From NCBI GenBank assembly GCA_013416795.1, contig RQSC01000619.1, positions 9,824 through 61,977 on the forward strand: 52,154 nucleotides of DNA. Direction: 5' to 3'. This DNA is from Prasinococcaceae sp. CCMP 1430. Taxonomy: Eukaryota; Plantae; Prasinodermophyta. The number at the start of each line of letters is the position of its first letter. Position 1 is the stretch's first letter. Below are positions 7,383 through 42,296 of the stretch, one piece after another. A model generated the notes under the pieces. The model did not search any database. It was not told the origin of the DNA and saw nothing but the letters and a program-made list of their open reading frames with translations. The position numbers were made by a program, and so were the translations under genes.

Positions 7383-8293
7383 NNNNNNNNNNNNNNNNNN
7401 NNNNNNNNNNNNNNNNNNNNNNNNNNNNNNNNNNNNNNNNNNNNNNNNNNNNNNNNNNNNNNNNNNNNNNNNNNNNNNNNNNNNNNNNNNNNNNNNNNNN
7501 NNNNNNNNNNNNNNNNNNNNNNNNNNNNNNNNNNNNNNNNNNNNNNNNNNNNNNNNNNNNNNNNNNNNNNNNNNNNNNNNNNNNNNNNNNNNNNNNNNNN
7601 NNNNNNNNNNNNNNNNNNNNNNNNNNNNNNNNNNNNNNNNNNNNNNNNNNNNNNNNNNNNNNNNNNNNNNNNNNNNNNNNNNNNNNNNNNNNNNNNNNNN
7701 NNNNNNNNNNNNNNNNNNNNNNNNNNNNNNNNNNNNNNNNNNNNNNNNNNNNNNNNNNNNNNNNNNNNNNNNNNNNNNNNNNNNNNNNNNNNNNNNNNNN
7801 NNNNNNNNNNNNNNNNNNNNNNNNNNNNNNNNNNNNNNNNNNNNNNNNNNNNNNNNNNNNNNNNNNNNNNNNNNNNNNNNNNNNNNNNNNNNNNNNNNNN
7901 NNNNNNNNNNNNNNNNNNNNNNNNNNNNNNNNNNNNNNNNNNNNNNNNNNNNNNNNNNNNNNNNNNNNNNNNNNNNNNNNNNNNNNNNNNNNNNNNNNNN
8001 NNNNNNNNNNNNNNNNNNNNNNNNNNNNNNNNNNNNNNNNNNNNNNNNNNNNNNNNNNNNNNNNNNNNNNNNNNNNNNNNNNNNNNNNNNNNNNNNNNNN
8101 NNNNNNNNNNNNNNNNNNNNNNNNNNNNNNNNNNNNNNNNNNNNNNNNNNNNNNNNNNNNNNNNNNNNNNNNNNNNNNNNNNNNNNNNNNNNNNNNNNNN
8201 NNNNNNNNNNNNNNNNNNNNNNNNNNNNNNNNNNNNNNNNNNNNNNNNNNNNNNNNNNNNNNNNNNNNNNNNNNNNNNNNNNNNNNNNNNNNN
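7383..8293. other. Assembly gap (911 N)
   Basis: Run of N. Further gaps at 6264, 11905-12021 and 35589-35677. Confidence 1.
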
Positions 8294-36947: not shown

Positions 36948-39301
36948 TCACCAGTCATCGCCGCTGCCGCTGCCGCTCTCTGCATCCCAGTCGCAGTCTA
37001 TCTCCGTCGCCTGACGCTGCAGCTCGGCCAGACCAGTGAGCTCCTCGAGGTACGCGGGCTCGTTGAACGCGCGCAGCAGGAACTCCTCGGGGGCGGCCTG
37101 GTACGCGGCGACCACCTTATCGGAGCAGGCCGTGCAGCAGTCGTACGCTGCGCCTGCCACAGGCAATTGCTGGAGCGAGCCGAGGAAGCCACGCAACTGG
37201 TGGGGCAGAGCTCCCAGTGGCGAGCGCGCGTCGCGCTCCTCGGCGGCCAGTCCACTAGCACCGCCACTGGCGGGCGCCGCCGCGCCCTCGGGGTGGTGCA
37301 CCATCGCCACGAGCATCTCCACAGCGAGCGCGCCCGCGATGGGGGCGAGGCCCGGCCGAGTGACCGTGCACTGCTGGTCGAGCGTGCGGTACTTGGTGGA
37401 GTCGAGCGGCGCCACGACATCGTTGCAGAAGTAGCATCCTAGGCGCGTGGTGCCGTCGGCCATCGCACGCCCAGCGCTCGAGGCGAGCGCTGCGTTGCGT
37501 TGCGCGGCGTCGTCGCCCGAAGGCGCGCTCCGCTGGGCGCATCCTGCGGCGACGCCATGGCGCATCACTGCGGTGTCGATGGGAAGCGCGGAGTCAGTTA
37601 TTTGCCACACATGCGCGCGACGGGGCGTCGAACATACGAAGGCAGGCGTCGCGCGCTTTCGAGCGCGCCTCCGAGGGGGCGCGCAAGGCCGCGCCTGCTC
37701 TATCCAGACGTACCGACGTACGAGTCGAAGCCAAGTGCCGTGTTGAACATCGGCCGCCCCATCGCCGAGCAGAGCAGGGTGGGAAGCCAGCGGCTCTCAC
37801 GCGTGTCCGTGAGCACAAACACGGCGTCGTGCTCCTCGATGAGATTCCTCAACTTTGCCGCGCTGGCGAGCGCGGCGTTCGCCTCAGCGCCACCAGTCTC
37901 GCCAACATCGTGTCCCGGCATGGGAATGTAGAGCTCGTGCGCGCAGGGGCGCGCCCCGGGGAATATTTTTGAGAGCGCCTCGGCGGCCGCCTCTGCCTTG
38001 GGCCTGCCGCCGTTCTTGCAGTCTTCGAAATTGTACAGACTTTGCCTCACAGGGTTCGAATAGGACACGCGAGCGCAGTCGGTGAGGGTCACGTGGCGCA
38101 CGCCCCATGCGAGCAACCCACGCGCCACCGCGCAGCCCAGCGTGCCTGCGCCGAGCAGCAGGCAACGCGTGCGCTGCAGCGCCTCCGTGTCGAGCTCAGG
38201 GAGCACTCGCCAGCGCATGAGCTTGAGGTTGAGGTCCGCCGCCTGCTCAGCGAGGCGCACGGGGTCCATGATGGCCCCGAGATCTGCCACGCGCGGCGCG
38301 GCCTTGCCCTTCGCGTTGCGCTCCCACGCGCGCCCGAGGCGCGGCATCGGTCCGTCGGTCGGTACATGCGGCACCTCGAGGTCCATGACGAGCGAGGTAG
38401 CCGCACACATGCGCCCGCGGGCCTCGCGCACACACAGCAGGCGCATCCTCGCCGACCCTCCCTCGGGCGCCCAGCGAGCGCCGGCAAGCGTGAGCAGGTT
38501 GCGCACGGGCCACGACGCCACGCCGGGCTCCTCGCATGGGTCGAAGGCGGCCACCAGCAGGCGGCCATTGCTCGCGTCGTTGCCGTCGCGCAAGGCCTCG
38601 CCCGCCTCGGCGAGGCTCACCCGCGCCCATGAGCCGTCCTCACCGCGTATCAAGCCGCACGCGCCGAGCCCACCGCCGTCGGCCCCGTCGCGCATTGCCT
38701 CGGTATGCGCCGCGCGCCATTCGGCGACGGCGTCCGCAAGCGCTGCCGCGTCGACGCCGCAGTCGGAAGCCTCTTCGACGGCGCGTGACGCCAGCAGTTG
38801 GGCGGGATGCTCGAGCGCAAAGCACGGCGCTGCCAGCCAGTGGTAGAAGCGCCATTTCTTCAGGTCGGCGTGCGCGAGCATCGCGAACCGACCCAGCAGC
38901 CAGGGCGCGCGCTCGGCGGCGCCCGAGGTGATGTCGTCCCACAACCGCCCCGCGGCGCCCTTCACGAGCGCGGTGCGGTCAAACTCCTTGAACGCCTCCA
39001 GCGTGTTGACGTTCACGAGCACGCCCGGCGCTGGGAAGCGGTTCGACGGGCATGCCGACGGGTCCGCCTCAACACCGCCGTCGCCGCTACTGCCGCTGGC
39101 GCCCGCAGCAGCGGCCGCGGTCGCGGCGGTGCCGAGCGCGCCCGACGAGACCTGCAGCAGTCGCGCGCCGGGCGCGGCGTGCGCGGCGAGCGCGAGCGGC
39201 CGCTCGCTCAGCCGCAGCGCGTCGAGCTTGAGCCGCGCGAGCTCCGCCCACAGCGCGACGTCCACGGACGACGCCCACGGCGAGAACTGCAGCGGTGCCA
39301 T
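36948..39301 (-). CDS. ATG7: Autophagy E1-like enzyme Atg7; 2 exons
   Basis: Exons 39301-37714 and 37567-36948; splicing restores ALGFDSYV|VMRHG. Also DLNLKLMRWR, LLGAGTLGC, VSYSNPVRQSL, LGCYFCNDVVAP and catalytic LDQQCTVTRPG. TTACA at 36900-36904. Confidence 0.96.
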
Positions 39302-39559
39302 CTCTGCGCCCCGCGCGCTTCGGGAGGCGGCAGCAGGGCGCCGCGCCGCGCCTGCGCTGCCGCGCCTGCGCTGTGTGGCAGGGCCCGCGCTGCACGCCGA
39401 GCGTTTTTGTTTTTGTGACAGGTGGACCAGAGTCTGGCAGCCACGCGGACCCGCGCGGAGGCGCGACGCATGGCAGACGGCGCGCGTGCCGCGGACGCGG
39501 CGCCGCCGCCGGGGCGGCGCGAAGTTGGGAGTCGCGTGGGGCGCGGCAGGCGGGGTGTC

Positions 39560-42163
39560 ATGTCCGCGGCCGCGCTCGACTACGGCGACTACGAGTACGG
39601 CGGCGCGAACAGCACGGCACATGCGTACGCGCACTTGCTCTCCGAGGGCGAAGTGCGCGCGCTGGCGCGCGCCAGCGTCGCCGTGTCGGCGGTATCCTTC
39701 GCGACATGCGGCGCGCTGGTGGCGTGCTACGCGGTGCTTCCCGAGCTTCGCCAGTTCGCCTTCACGCTCGTGGCACTGCTGTGCGTGTGCGACGGCTGCG
39801 CGGCTGCGACTAACTTGCTCGGTGCCCCGGCCGACGGCTCGGCGCTGTGTGAGATGCAAGCGGTGCTGGGCTCGTTCTTCAGCCTGGCCGCGGTGCTGTG
39901 GACAGCGGTGATCGCATCGGTGTTGAAGCAGGGCGTCGTCAGCCCCCAGGCGCTGGGCAATATGCGGAAGCGCGCGTACGCCTACCACCTCTTCTGCTGG
40001 GGCACGGCGGCGGCCGCCGCGTGCCTTCCCGCGCTCACGGCGAGCTACGGCGCCGCGGGCGCCGTGTGCTGGATCGTCGGCTCGGCGCTTGGACAGGCCC
40101 TGCGCTTCGTGACGTTTTACTTTCCGCTATACTTGGTCATCGCCTACAATGCGTGGGCGTATTGGAGCGTGGTACAGGTCGTCAGGAGCGCGCGCGGACT
40201 CGCCGACGAGGAGCGGAGGCGCGCCGCCGCGCTTCTCTCTTACCCAGCCATACTCCTCGTGGCGTGGGCGGGCGGCACGCTGAATCGTCTCCACAACTGG
40301 GCCTACCCAGGCCAACCCAGCTTCGGGCTGTACATGGTAGCCACGGTGATGGGCGCTTCGCAGGGGTTGATGCACGCGGTGGCGTTCGGCGCCACGCGCG
40401 CTGTGCGCGATGCGCTCGCGCGGTGGCGCAGCGAGGTGAAGGCGGGCGGCTGGCGCGGCGCAGGTGCGCGCGCCGCGCTCGCAGCGAGGCGGGGCAGGGC
40501 GGGCGAGGGTCTGGAGATGCAGAGCCTCAAGCGCAAGGATGGTGGGGAGGGCGGCGCCCGACTGGGCCTGCTCGGAGACGACCTCGACTCGGGTGGTGGT
40601 GGACTCGTGGATGTGTCGAGCCAAGTGCGCTCCGCGCACGTGGCTGCGCTCGGCATCTACGAGTCGTTGTCATTGCTGAGTTCGCAGAGCGTACTGGCGT
40701 ACGAGGCGCTCGCCGCCGCCGGTCGCGGCACCAAGAGCGGCGGCGAGCACGGCGACGCTCGCGGGAAGGGTGACAGCTTCGCCACGGCCGTGACGCTCAT
40801 CAAGAGCTTCATCGGCCTCGGCATTTTAGCCTTTCCGAAGGCATTTTCCGCCGTCGGCTACGTCGGCGGATGTGTTGGCGTTCTCGTCATCGCGGGGGTC
40901 TCGCTGCATGGCATGCAGCTGCTGCTCGATGTTCAGGCGCGGCTATCCTCCGGGCGAAATGGCGCTTCGAGAAGTGCTGGGAACGGCATCGCGGGCGATG
41001 GGAAGCCTGCTGGCGGGCTGCAGTCGTACGAGCTCGTGAGTCACAGCGACGCGCGCGAGTGTGATGCCGGCGAAGGCATCACCGCAGACGAGGGTGGCGC
41101 GAGTGAGGCGGGCCCACGTGAGCGCGCGAGCCGCACGCTCGACTCGTACACGGCGCTCGGCGAGGCGGTGTGGGGCTCGGCCGGTAGGAAAATCGTCGAA
41201 TTCGGCCTTTTCACAAGTCAAGTGGGATTTGGCACGGCCTATCTGATTTTCATCGGACACAACGTGTTCAGCGTCATCCCCGAGCTGGGCTCGCCGCAGG
41301 CCGCGACCCTACTCGCTACTCTTTTTCTGTACTTTCCCTGCTGCCTGCCGGATGTGAGGCGACTAGCGTCGACCAGCCTCGTCGCGAACGCGCTCACGGT
41401 CTTCAGCCTAGGCTTCGTCTTGTACTGCGCTCTCAAGGTACTGCGTGCCAACGGGCACCAAACGCGGGCGGAATTCGCGCAACTCGGCGTGGAGCCCCTG
41501 CGCGTCGCGGGCGGACCGTACTTTTTTGCCAGCACCGTCTTCGCTTTCGAAGGCATCGGGCTGGTGCTGCCCGTGCAGCAATCGATGCAGCGGCCGCAGG
41601 AGCTGCCGGGCATGCTCCGCTACACCGTTGTTTCGGTCGCCGTCGTCATGTTGTGTCTGGGCGGTTTCTGCTACCTCGCGTGGGGGGACGCGACACGAGA
41701 CATGATAACGCTGAATTTGCCGCAGGACAGCGTGCTATCCGCGATGGTGAAGCTCATTTACTCCTTCGCCCTCGGACTTACCTACCCCTTGCAGCTTTTG
41801 CCTGCTTTCCGCATTGTCGAGGACTCGGGCCTGCTGGACCGCCTCGTCGTGCCCCCGTCGCTCGAGGCGTCCATGCCAAGGCTGCGCATCAACGTCATGC
41901 GCGTCTGCCTCGTGACCGTGACGTCCGTGGTGGCTGCTCTCACTCCACATTTTGGCCTTTTCGTGAATCTCGTCGGCGCCGTGAGCTGCAGCCTTCTCGC
42001 GTTCATCCTGCCCGCAGCGATGCACTTCGGCTTCGGCGCGACGCGGGCTGTGCGTGCGAAGGACGGCCTTCTGATCCTCTTCGGGATCGCGGGGGGCGCC
42101 GTGTCCTTCGTATTGACAGTGAAGGAGCTGATTGCAGCGTTCGCCGCTGGCGGTGGGGACTAG
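39560..42163 (+). CDS. Fusion of a GCR1/cAMP-receptor-like 7TM domain and an Aa_trans (SLC36/ANT-AVT-type) amino-acid transporter, 867 aa
   Basis: Single ORF. The 7TM part (about 39650-40420) has FAFTLVALLCVCD, LCEMQA, SVLKQ, YHLFCWG, GAVCWI, FVTFYFPLY, YPAILLVAW and SQGLMHAVAFG. The transporter part (about 40770-42150) has TLIKSFIGLGILAFPKAF, SYTALGEAVWG, FAFEGIGLVLP, LTYPLQL and LVGAVSCSLLAFILP. Confidence 0.88.
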   Translation: MSAAALDYGDYEYGGANSTAHAYAHLLSEGEVRALARASVAVSAVSFATCGALVACYAVLPELRQFAFTLVALLCVCDGCAAATNLLGAPADGSALCEMQAVLGSFFSLAAVLWTAVIASVLKQGVVSPQALGNMRKRAYAYHLFCWGTAAAAACLPALTASYGAAGAVCWIVGSALGQALRFVTFYFPLYLVIAYNAWAYWSVVQVVRSARGLADEERRRAAALLSYPAILLVAWAGGTLNRLHNWAYPGQPSFGLYMVATVMGASQGLMHAVAFGATRAVRDALARWRSEVKAGGWRGAGARAALAARRGRAGEGLEMQSLKRKDGGEGGARLGLLGDDLDSGGGGLVDVSSQVRSAHVAALGIYESLSLLSSQSVLAYEALAAAGRGTKSGGEHGDARGKGDSFATAVTLIKSFIGLGILAFPKAFSAVGYVGGCVGVLVIAGVSLHGMQLLLDVQARLSSGRNGASRSAGNGIAGDGKPAGGLQSYELVSHSDARECDAGEGITADEGGASEAGPRERASRTLDSYTALGEAVWGSAGRKIVEFGLFTSQVGFGTAYLIFIGHNVFSVIPELGSPQAATLLATLFLYFPCCLPDVRRLASTSLVANALTVFSLGFVLYCALKVLRANGHQTRAEFAQLGVEPLRVAGGPYFFASTVFAFEGIGLVLPVQQSMQRPQELPGMLRYTVVSVAVVMLCLGGFCYLAWGDATRDMITLNLPQDSVLSAMVKLIYSFALGLTYPLQLLPAFRIVEDSGLLDRLVVPPSLEASMPRLRINVMRVCLVTVTSVVAALTPHFGLFVNLVGAVSCSLLAFILPAAMHFGFGATRAVRAKDGLLILFGIAGGAVSFVLTVKELIAAFAAGGGD

Positions 42164-42296
42164 CCGGCTCGCGGCGCGGGCGCGCGGCGGATGGAAGCGG
42201 GGGCGGAGGAGGCAAAGGCGGAGGCGGAGGCGGGAGCGACCCCATCTGTTGTAATAATGTGTACCAAATTACGATTCGTGAGTTCGAGGCAGGCGC

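What the first reader, a model, noticed from the sequence alone, without database searches (positions are those of the whole stretch)
39560..42163. GPCR-like 7TM domain fused in frame to an amino-acid transporter (candidate hard-wired transceptor)
Seen: one stop-free ORF encodes a GCR1/Dictyostelium cAMP-receptor-like 7TM domain, a linker of about 110 aa, and a complete SLC36/ANT-type transporter. The linker has no AT-rich intergenic stretch and no TGTAA, whereas TGTAA follows the final stop (42250). Established: a 7TM C-terminus and an Aa_trans N-terminus are both cytosolic, so an 18-TM chain is topologically coherent. GPCR fusions to RGS, PIP kinase and other enzymes are known. Inference: a receptor physically coupled to amino-acid transport or sensing. 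I do not know of a described GPCR-transporter fusion.
Basis: partly seen in the sequence, partly recalled or inferred. Interest (0 to 1): 0.85.

Follow-up and report, generated by a model that had tools for sequence, protein, structure and literature searches.

The report
Conserved GPCR-amino-acid-transporter fusion gene
A green picoalga encodes one 18-helix membrane protein that joins a receptor-type seven-helix domain to a lysosomal-type amino-acid transporter, and the same fusion, with its own conserved linker motif, is inherited in other marine algae and chlorarachniophytes, which makes it a natural candidate nutrient "transceptor" that I could not find described in any paper.

Summary
Window 39560-42163 (+) is one 867-codon ORF. 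It carries Pfam Dicty_CAR (E 2e-8), a linker of about 110 residues, and Aa_trans (E 2e-60).

The fusion is not a read-through artefact:
- At least ten lineages at 30-44% identity share the architecture. These include a complete Chlorarachnion reptans mRNA, an intron-rich Amorphochlora gene and several metagenome ORFs.
- In separate trees of each half, the fused proteins fall into one group. This fits a single origin.
- Every member has a linker motif, L-x-D-V-S-x-Q-V-R-x-x-Y-x-x-x-L-G-x-Y, that is absent from standalone relatives.

AlphaFold gives a confident GPCR fold: seven helices, helix 8 and the TM3-ECL2 cysteine pair. The transporter half aligns end to end with SLC36A1/PAT1.

I found no paper on this particular pairing.

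Function is inferred only. The likeliest reading is a receptor-regulated, or signalling, amino-acid/H+ transporter. Whether it couples to G proteins could not be tested.

Verdict: a real gene and a new variant of a known kind. Interest is moderately high.

The parts
39560..42163 (+). Complete intron-less gene for the 867-aa fusion protein (stop codon at 42161-42163)
   Evidence: ORF. Pfam Dicty_CAR + Aa_trans. Identical EukProt protein, and metagenome variants that all keep the 867-aa length, (synonymous:non-synonymous = 26:6).
39560..39643 (+). Acidic external N-terminal tail (aa 1-28), with no K/R and the protein's only N-x-S/T sequon (N17-S-T, 39608-39616)
   Evidence: pLDDT below 50 for residues 1-23.
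39644..40441 (+). cAMP-receptor-like GPCR-fold domain: TM1-TM7 (aa 29-277), an ECL2 beta-hairpin (aa 163-172) and helix 8 (aa 280-294). Includes the Cys97/Cys170 pair (39848-39850, 40067-40069) and the clade-specific His272 in TM7.
   Evidence: AF2 pLDDT 91, pTM 0.88. Foldseek top hits are beta1-adrenoceptor, adhesion GPCRs and Frizzled, TM-score 0.65-0.75. C97 and C170 are invariant in 130 sequences. His272 versus Asn in standalone relatives.
40442..40771 (+). Cytosolic linker (aa 295-404), K/R-rich and mostly low-confidence. Contains Met320 (40517-40519), a possible internal start.
40601..40678 (+). Conserved linker motif, aa 348-373 (GLVDVSSQVRSAHVAALGIYESLSLL), predicted helical
   Evidence: L, V, R, L and G are invariant in the alignment of 9 fusions. 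A motif HMM hits every member of the fusion clade (E 4e-18 to 1e-4). Among about 250 standalone 7TM or unfused transporter proteins it gives only weak half-matches, in the N-tails of the sister transporters. Helix at 353-370 with pLDDT 50-64.
40772..42151 (+). Aa_trans (AAAP) transporter domain of SLC36/AVT3 type, 11 TM helices (aa 405-864)
   Evidence: Pfam E 1.8e-60. The profile aligns with PAT1/SLC36A1 9v3t residues 45-460, E 1.3e-75. Foldseek hits SLC38A9, LAX3 and AUX1. The TM1 G-x-G-x-L-x-x-P and TM6 F-E-G-I motifs are invariant among fusions.
40925..41176 (+). Lineage-specific low-complexity cytosolic loop between transporter TM2 and TM3 (aa 456-539)
   Evidence: The other fusions show a gap here. 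pLDDT below 50 for residues 482-518.
42250..42254 (+). TGTAA, the putative green-algal polyadenylation signal, 87 nt after the stop
   Evidence: The only + strand TGTAA between 39000 and 43000. Sequence shown.
39302..39559 (.). 258-bp divergent intergenic region between the ATG7-like gene (minus strand, 37700-39301) and the fusion gene
   Evidence: Genes called on the syntenic metagenome contigs L001-L003, mapped to the window. No codon periodicity.

Best explanation
**Shown**
- Window 39560-42163 is a genuine single gene for an 18-helix membrane protein.
- The parts, in order, are: an N-terminal cAMP-receptor-like GPCR-fold domain with its N-terminus outside; a cytosolic linker carrying a family-specific conserved helix motif; and a C-terminal 11-TM amino-acid transporter of the SLC36/AVT3 clade.
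- The protein belongs to a fusion family whose members group together in separate trees of each half. This fits a single origin from a short-tailed standalone receptor and a transporter that already carried part of the linker motif in its N-tail.
- The family occurs in GC-rich marine picoalgae and in chlorarachniophytes.

**Inferred mechanism**
- The protein works as one unit, a receptor-coupled amino-acid/H+ transporter or 'transceptor'.
- The pocket of the 7TM domain and the outward face of the transporter look onto the same compartment, either the outside of the cell or the vacuole/lysosome lumen.
- The two domains communicate on the cytosolic side through helix 8 and the conserved linker helix.
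- Either ligand binding at the receptor tunes transport, or transporter occupancy is reported through the receptor's cytosolic face.
- The output is probably not classical G-protein signalling. The conserved TM7 Asn of the standalone relatives is replaced by His in most fusion lineages, and the receptor's C-tail is tethered to the transporter.
For: **Real ORF and domains**
- ORF and Pfam domains.
- Independent metagenome assemblies, 98% identical in DNA, keep the same 2604-nt ORF with 26 synonymous and 6 non-synonymous differences and no indels.
- The linker has coding periodicity.

**Conserved architecture**
- A phmmer search of the 7TM half against 1.84 billion representative proteins gave 1701 hits. 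The long ones among the best hits (P0012, P0014, P0016, P0021, P0025, P0028, P0031) all carry Dicty_CAR + Aa_trans.
- More fused proteins appeared: P0162, P0163, P0165, P0169 and P0175.
- On Tara scaffold L009 the two halves are adjacent and separated only by a frameshift at a poly-G run.
- Transcript evidence in a relative: the Chlorarachnion reptans MMETSP contig L010 (2794 nt) holds the whole fusion ORF, with an in-frame stop upstream.
- The Amorphochlora gene is spliced from 19.6 kb.

**Single origin**
- 7TM tree: 14 fusion rows plus 3 fragments form one split, SH-aLRT 98.
- Aa_trans tree: all fusions plus 4 fragments form one group, SH-aLRT 86, with the same inner sub-clades.

**Linker motif and folds**
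- The linker motif is conserved in all members.
- GPCR fold.
- Transporter core.
- Topology.
- Clade-specific His272.
Against: - I examined no transcript of the window organism itself. Contig L004 looked transcript-sized but simply breaks at a microsatellite.
- There is no experimental evidence for transport, for a ligand, or for communication between the domains.
- AF2 does not fix the relative placement of the two domains (pTM 0.63). The linker motif has only pLDDT 50-64.
- I could not inspect inter-domain contacts.
- Met320 in the linker would allow a transporter-only product.
- PAT1 His55, reported as important for proton coupling (my recollection), is an invariant Thr here. The transport mode may therefore differ from SLC36.
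- Whether the organism has G proteins is unknown.
Confidence: 0.7

Rival explanations
1. Canonical GPCR signalling: the 7TM half is a true G-protein-coupled receptor, for example for an extracellular nutrient or nucleotide. It activates a heterotrimeric G protein, and the transporter merely rides along or delivers the ligand.
For: - The domain has a full GPCR fold with helix 8 and the TM3-ECL2 disulfide pair.
- It scores above the Pfam Dicty_CAR threshold.
- Standalone relatives are annotated as G-protein coupled receptors in Aureococcus and Tribonema.
- Relatives also hit the Git3/Gpr1 nutrient-receptor C-terminal model PF11970.
Against: - The conserved TM7 Asn of the family is His in 82% of fusion lineages.
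- The receptor C-tail is tethered to 11 further helices.
- Most chlorophyte green algae are reported to lack G-alpha. This is my own knowledge, not checked here, and may not hold for this lineage or for chlorarachniophytes.
- LYCHOS, the one known GPCR-transporter hybrid, is not known to signal through G proteins (PMC11525196).
Confidence: 0.15
2. The 7TM domain is a non-sensing accessory module. It serves as a structural, dimerisation or trafficking handle for the transporter, for example through arrestin-type endocytosis or sorting to the vacuole, and has no ligand of its own.
For: - The GPCR domain of LYCHOS probably does not bind ligands canonically (abstract of 10.1101/2024.09.24.614577).
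- The external N-tail is short and there is no extracellular ligand-binding domain.
Against: - The 7TM core stays highly conserved with its standalone receptor relatives, including the ECL2 hairpin and the disulfide pair.
- Only one clade-specific substitution was found, which argues that the receptor pocket is still under the same constraints.
Confidence: 0.12
3. Artefact: two adjacent genes merged by a missing stop, by misassembly, or by chance read-through in stop-poor GC-rich DNA.
For: - Long spurious ORFs are common in this 69% GC window.
- By my estimate, a 125-codon stop-free in-frame spacer has a chance probability of a few percent.
- Met320 could start a separate transporter.
Against: - At least ten divergent lineages share the same fusion, including a cDNA.
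- The linker motif is conserved.
- The linker shows codon periodicity.
- Independent assemblies carry the same ORF.
- No poly(A) signal lies inside the gene.
Confidence: 0.03

Closest known systems
LYCHOS / GPR155 (animal lysosomal cholesterol sensor; PMC11525196)
   Same: - One chain combines a secondary-transporter fold with a GPCR-fold 7TM domain (17 TM there, 18 here).
- Both are linked to nutrient sensing and described as 'transceptors'.
- The SLC36 relatives of the transporter half studied here are lysosomal or vacuolar.
   Different: - The transporter there is PIN-like, not AAAP.
- The order is reversed: in LYCHOS the transporter is N-terminal.
- LYCHOS has a C-terminal DEP domain, and none was found here.
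- Foldseek found no single chain covering both halves.
- The origin is independent.
cAMP-receptor-like GPCRs (Pfam Dicty_CAR; Dictyostelium cAR1, plant GCR1, protist cAR-like receptors)
   Same: - The Pfam score is above threshold.
- It has a 7TM fold with helix 8 and the conserved TM3-ECL2 cysteine pair.
- It shares the family motifs in TM3, TM5, TM6 and TM7.
   Different: - These receptors are described as having short N- and C-termini (PMC12716839). This one carries an 11-TM transporter at its C-terminus.
- The TM7 Asn is replaced by His.
SLC36 (PAT1-4) / yeast and plant AVT3/AVT4 proton-coupled amino-acid transporters
   Same: - It aligns end to end with PAT1 (E 1e-75).
- It has 11 TM helices.
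- The TM1 and TM6 motifs are conserved.
- In the tree it groups with AVT3-like and SLC36 proteins.
   Different: - It carries an N-terminal 7TM domain and a conserved linker helix.
- The PAT1 His55 column is Thr.
- In the window protein an 85-residue loop is inserted between TM2 and TM3.
GPCR-bigrams of oomycetes, amoebozoans and choanoflagellates (GPCR-PIPK, GPCR-TKL/kinase; discussed in PMC12716839)
   Same: An N-terminal 7TM receptor domain is fused to a C-terminal effector module, in protist lineages.
   Different: The C-terminal partners there are soluble enzymes (kinases, cyclases, phosphatases). Here the partner is a polytopic membrane transporter.
Transceptors without fusion: SLC38A9, PAT1/SLC36A1 with mTORC1, yeast Gap1 and Ssy1
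   Same: An amino-acid transporter fold is used for nutrient signalling. The fold of the C-terminal half matches SLC38A9.
   Different: In those proteins signalling runs through soluble tails or partner proteins. None has a covalently attached GPCR domain.

Membership tests
Pfam Dicty_CAR / cAMP-receptor-like GPCRs | Profile score above the curated gathering threshold | tested here: met
   34.1 bits against a cut-off of 21, E 2.2e-8. Fusion relatives reach E 1e-20 to 8e-22.
Pfam Dicty_CAR / cAMP-receptor-like GPCRs | Seven-helix GPCR fold with helix 8 and a TM3-ECL2 disulfide pair | tested here: met
   AF2 pLDDT 91. Foldseek matches class A, adhesion and Frizzled receptors at TM-score 0.65-0.75. 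C97 and C170 are invariant in 130 sequences.
Pfam Dicty_CAR / cAMP-receptor-like GPCRs | Short N- and C-termini (as described in PMC12716839) | tested here: not met
   The C-terminus continues into a 110-aa linker and an 11-TM transporter.
Pfam Dicty_CAR / cAMP-receptor-like GPCRs | Ligand (cAMP) binding and G-protein coupling | not testable with these tools
   No assay is possible, and the rest of the genome could not be searched for G-protein subunits. The family's TM7 Asn is His272 here.
AAAP / Aa_trans, SLC36-AVT3 clade | Profile score above threshold and end-to-end alignment with a solved member | tested here: met
   205 bits against a cut-off of 25.6. PAT1 9v3t residues 45-460, E 1.3e-75.
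AAAP / Aa_trans, SLC36-AVT3 clade | 11 TM helices in the LeuT-type fold | tested here: met
   11 helices at pLDDT above 90. Foldseek hits SLC38A9, LAX3 and AUX1 with target-normalised TM-score 0.73-0.76.
AAAP / Aa_trans, SLC36-AVT3 clade | Conserved TM1 (G-x-G-x-L-x-x-P) and TM6 (F-E-G-I-G) substrate-site motifs | tested here: met
   These are invariant columns in the alignment of 8 fusion transporters, and they match PAT1.
AAAP / Aa_trans, SLC36-AVT3 clade | His55 of PAT1 (proposed proton-coupling residue; recalled from the literature, not checked) | tested here: not met
   The aligned column is an invariant Thr in the fusion clade.
AAAP / Aa_trans, SLC36-AVT3 clade | Amino-acid/H+ transport activity | not testable with these tools
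   This needs uptake assays.
LYCHOS / GPR155 | N-terminal PIN-like transporter, then a GPCR domain, then a C-terminal DEP domain | tested here: not met
   Pfam finds only Dicty_CAR followed by Aa_trans, with no Mem_trans/PIN and no DEP. The order is reversed, and no structural match covers both halves.

The most novel reading that the evidence does not exclude
This is an ancient family of hard-wired amino-acid transceptors with a single origin. In it, a cAMP-receptor-like GPCR domain and an SLC36/AVT3-type transporter are allosterically coupled through a conserved cytosolic linker helix, and they signal or gate without G proteins. It would be the second natural GPCR-transporter hybrid after LYCHOS. 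It arose independently, in the green lineage, and was passed to chlorarachniophytes, plausibly with their green endosymbiont.
Probability: 0.35. Interest if true: 0.8.

Novelty: new variant of a known kind. Interest (0 to 1): 0.68.

Why it matters
**A second hybrid.** GPCR-transporter hybrids were thought exceptional, and LYCHOS/GPR155 is the textbook single case. A second, independently evolved hybrid, built from different receptor and transporter families, would show that wiring a 7TM sensor directly to a nutrient carrier is a recurrent solution.

**A handle on the mechanism.** The family offers a conserved linker motif and a clade-specific TM7 change. These give a simple genetic handle on how the two folds talk to each other.

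**A clue to algal GPCRs.** It bears on what GPCR-fold proteins do in algae that may lack G proteins.

**Nutrient sensing in the sea.** It bears on how abundant marine picoeukaryotes sense or scavenge amino acids.

**Ease of study.** The gene has no introns and is compact, so it is easy to express.

Tried and rejected
- **Word-index searches.** Searches with the whole protein and with the 7TM region returned only the protein itself. Low-complexity words filled the candidate list. This says nothing about relatives, which the exhaustive phmmer search then found.
- **PDB sequence search.** A phmmer search of the 7TM half against PDB sequences found nothing, even at E 10. The fold search was needed.
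- **Contig L004.** This contig (2773 nt, with about 85 nt on each side of the ORF) looked like a full-length transcript of the window gene. Its 3' end coincides with a GGCGGA microsatellite, where another assembly also breaks. It is therefore not evidence for a transcript end.
- **Selection in the linker.** The close variants have only 3 synonymous and 1 non-synonymous change in the linker. That is too few for a dN/dS estimate, so I relied on the motif conservation in distant homologues.
- **Literature.** Four searches found no description of this fusion: Dicty_CAR + Aa_trans; GPCR-bigram + amino acid transporter; GPCR/amino acid transporter/fusion/chlorarachniophyte; Dicty_CAR + domain architecture. 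Subscription journals are not covered.
- **G-protein inventory.** I looked for one through papers and scan notes and found nothing usable.
- **Dileucine sorting motif.** I considered one in the linker and dropped it. No clean [DE]xxxL[LI] match is present.
Full report
**1. The observation**

The window is GC-rich eukaryotic DNA, about 69% GC. The ORF listing gives a stop-free ORF at 39422-42163 on the + strand. From the ATG at 39560 it encodes 867 residues. That exact sequence is already deposited as a EukProt protein, and it heads a 90% cluster of 11 members from ENA and Logan assemblies.

Pfam finds Dicty_CAR at residues 46-276 (34.1 bits, cut-off 21, E 2.2e-8). It also finds Aa_trans (205 bits, E 1.8e-60). 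A missing stop proves little on its own, because long spurious ORFs occur in every frame of this DNA. I therefore looked for independent evidence.

**2. Is it one gene?**

- Four metagenome contigs (L001-L004) are 98-98.7% identical in DNA. They keep the same neighbourhood, with an ATG7-like gene divergently upstream. They also keep exactly the same 2604-nt ORF, without indels, with 26 synonymous and 6 non-synonymous differences.
- The linker (aa 281-405) has coding-type GC periodicity in frame (0.78/0.59/0.82). The flanking intergenic DNA is flat.
- No TGTAA lies inside the gene.
- The decisive evidence is the set of relatives described next.

**3. Relatives**

An exhaustive phmmer search with residues 1-290 against 1.84 billion representative proteins gave 1701 hits. 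Most are about 300-aa standalone 7TM proteins. Those I looked up come from Aureococcus ('G-protein coupled receptor'), Heterosigma, Ancoracysta, Tribonema and Pterosperma. The best-scoring hits, however, are enriched in long proteins. P0012, P0014, P0016, P0021, P0025, P0028 and P0031 all carry Dicty_CAR followed by Aa_trans.

Cluster look-ups and a profile search with the transporter half added P0162, P0163, P0165, P0169 and P0175. Some of these can be traced to a source:

- P0014 is a complete ORF on a Chlorarachnion reptans MMETSP transcript. The contig L010 is 2794 nt, with the ORF at 169-2568 and an in-frame stop upstream. In that relative the fusion therefore sits on one mRNA.
- P0163 is Amorphochlora amoebiformis GAB5361409.1. 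Its gene is spliced from 19.6 kb.
- L007 shows a GT-AG intron inside the transporter part.
- On Tara scaffold L009 the two halves are adjacent ORFs, separated only by a frame change at a poly-G run.

**4. One origin**

In a tree of 130 7TM domains, the 14 fusion rows plus three short fragments form one split with SH-aLRT 98. In a tree of transporter domains, all fusions fall into one group (SH-aLRT 86), together with four N-terminally incomplete sequences: Gymnochlora, Bigelowiella and two metagenome fragments. Successive outgroups are an unfused protist clade, fungal AVT3-like proteins, octopus 'AVT3C-like' proteins and animal SLC36. Both trees recover the same inner grouping of chlorarachniophytes with the P0165/P0169 lineage (P0175 joins it in the transporter tree). 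This fits co-inheritance of the two halves as one gene.

**5. A family-specific linker motif**

Aligning the linkers of nine fusions shows an otherwise unalignable acidic or low-complexity spacer interrupted by one conserved block. The block reads L-x-D-V-S-x-Q-V-R-x-x-Y-x-x-x-L-G-x-Y-x-x-x-G, at window residues 348-373, and contains invariant L, V, R, L and G.

A small HMM of this block hits every member of the fusion clade, including the 'fragments' and the second ORF of L009. Among about 250 standalone receptors and unfused transporters it gives only weak half-matches (G-[VL]-[YF]-D-F-L-G), in the N-terminal tails of the unfused sister transporters. The motif therefore seems to derive from the transporter's N-tail and was elaborated after the fusion.

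AF2 predicts it as a helix (residues 353-370) at modest confidence.

**6. The two folds**

With a 130-sequence alignment, the 7TM half folds at pLDDT 91 and pTM 0.88. The model has seven helices, an ECL2 beta-hairpin and helix 8. Foldseek matches beta1-adrenoceptor, adhesion GPCRs and Frizzled at TM-score 0.65-0.75.

Cys97 (top of TM3) and Cys170 (ECL2) are the only invariant columns of the family. This is the classical GPCR disulfide pair.

Only one position separates the fusion clade from its standalone relatives. The TM7 motif Q-G-x-x-N-A-x-x-Y-G has His at residue 272 in 82% of fusion lineages, against Asn in 107 of 113 standalone proteins.

The transporter profile aligns with PAT1/SLC36A1 (9v3t) over residues 45-460, E 1.3e-75. 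The TM1 and TM6 motifs are invariant. The PAT1 His55 column is an invariant Thr.

The full-length model has pLDDT 82 and pTM 0.63. Both domains score above 90 and the linker is poorly defined. No solved chain covers both halves.

K+R make up 3 of 102 residues in 'outside' loops and 34 of 262 in 'inside' loops. The only N-glycosylation sequon lies in the external N-tail. This supports the 18-TM topology with a cytosolic linker.

**7. Mechanism**

The following is shown: a conserved fusion of a receptor fold and a transporter fold, apparently of single origin, with a conserved cytosolic connecting element.

The rest is inferred. The two domains face the same non-cytosolic compartment and are coupled on the cytosolic side, making a receptor-regulated transporter or a signalling transporter. 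The nearest unfused relatives are lysosomal or vacuolar exporters (SLC36, AVT3/4; established knowledge), so a vacuolar location is plausible but untested.

Classical G-protein coupling cannot be judged here. The TM7 Asn-to-His change, the tethered C-tail and the LYCHOS precedent make a G-protein-independent mode somewhat more likely.

**8. Comparison and novelty**

LYCHOS differs in transporter family (PIN-like), in domain order and in having a DEP domain, and it is unrelated in origin.

cAMP-receptor-type GPCRs are described as having short termini (PMC12716839). Known GPCR fusions in protists carry soluble enzymes.

Four full-text searches found no description of a Dicty_CAR-Aa_trans protein. 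The proteins themselves sit unannotated in public databases as 'hypothetical protein'.

I rate this a new variant of a known kind.

**9. Organism**

Other agents of this scan name the genome as Prasinoderma coloniale. I did not verify this. The GC content and the compact, intron-poor genes fit it.

Noticed in passing
window 7383-8293: A run of N (an assembly gap) explains the apparent 28% GC dip in the composition profile. It is not a biological AT-rich island.
   Followed up: yes
window 42205-42233: A GGCGGA-type microsatellite lies just after the stop codon. Two independent metagenome and Logan contigs (L003, L004) break exactly here.
   Followed up: partly
window 37700-39301 (minus strand): An ATG7-like gene (ATG7_N + ThiF) lies divergently upstream, 258 bp from the fusion gene's ATG. 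The 762-aa minus-strand ORF listed by the ORF listing over-extends it into the fusion gene.
   Followed up: partly
L009:1440-1530: On a Tara Oceans scaffold the homologous receptor and transporter halves are separate ORFs, 22 nt apart, in different frames, at a poly-G run. This is probably a sequencing frameshift. A genuinely split version is not excluded.
   Followed up: partly
fusion clade, window residue 272 (40373-40375): The TM7 motif Asn, conserved in 107 of 113 standalone relatives, is His in most fusion lineages. It is Asp in P0028 and is kept as Asn in P0162.
   Followed up: partly
A 2025 eLife survey (PMC12716839) states that GPR155 is absent outside holozoans.
   Followed up: no
L011:4001-23569: The Amorphochlora amoebiformis orthologue (785 aa) is spread over 19.6 kb. 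Its gene is therefore heavily interrupted by introns, in contrast to the intron-less picoalgal copies.
   Followed up: no
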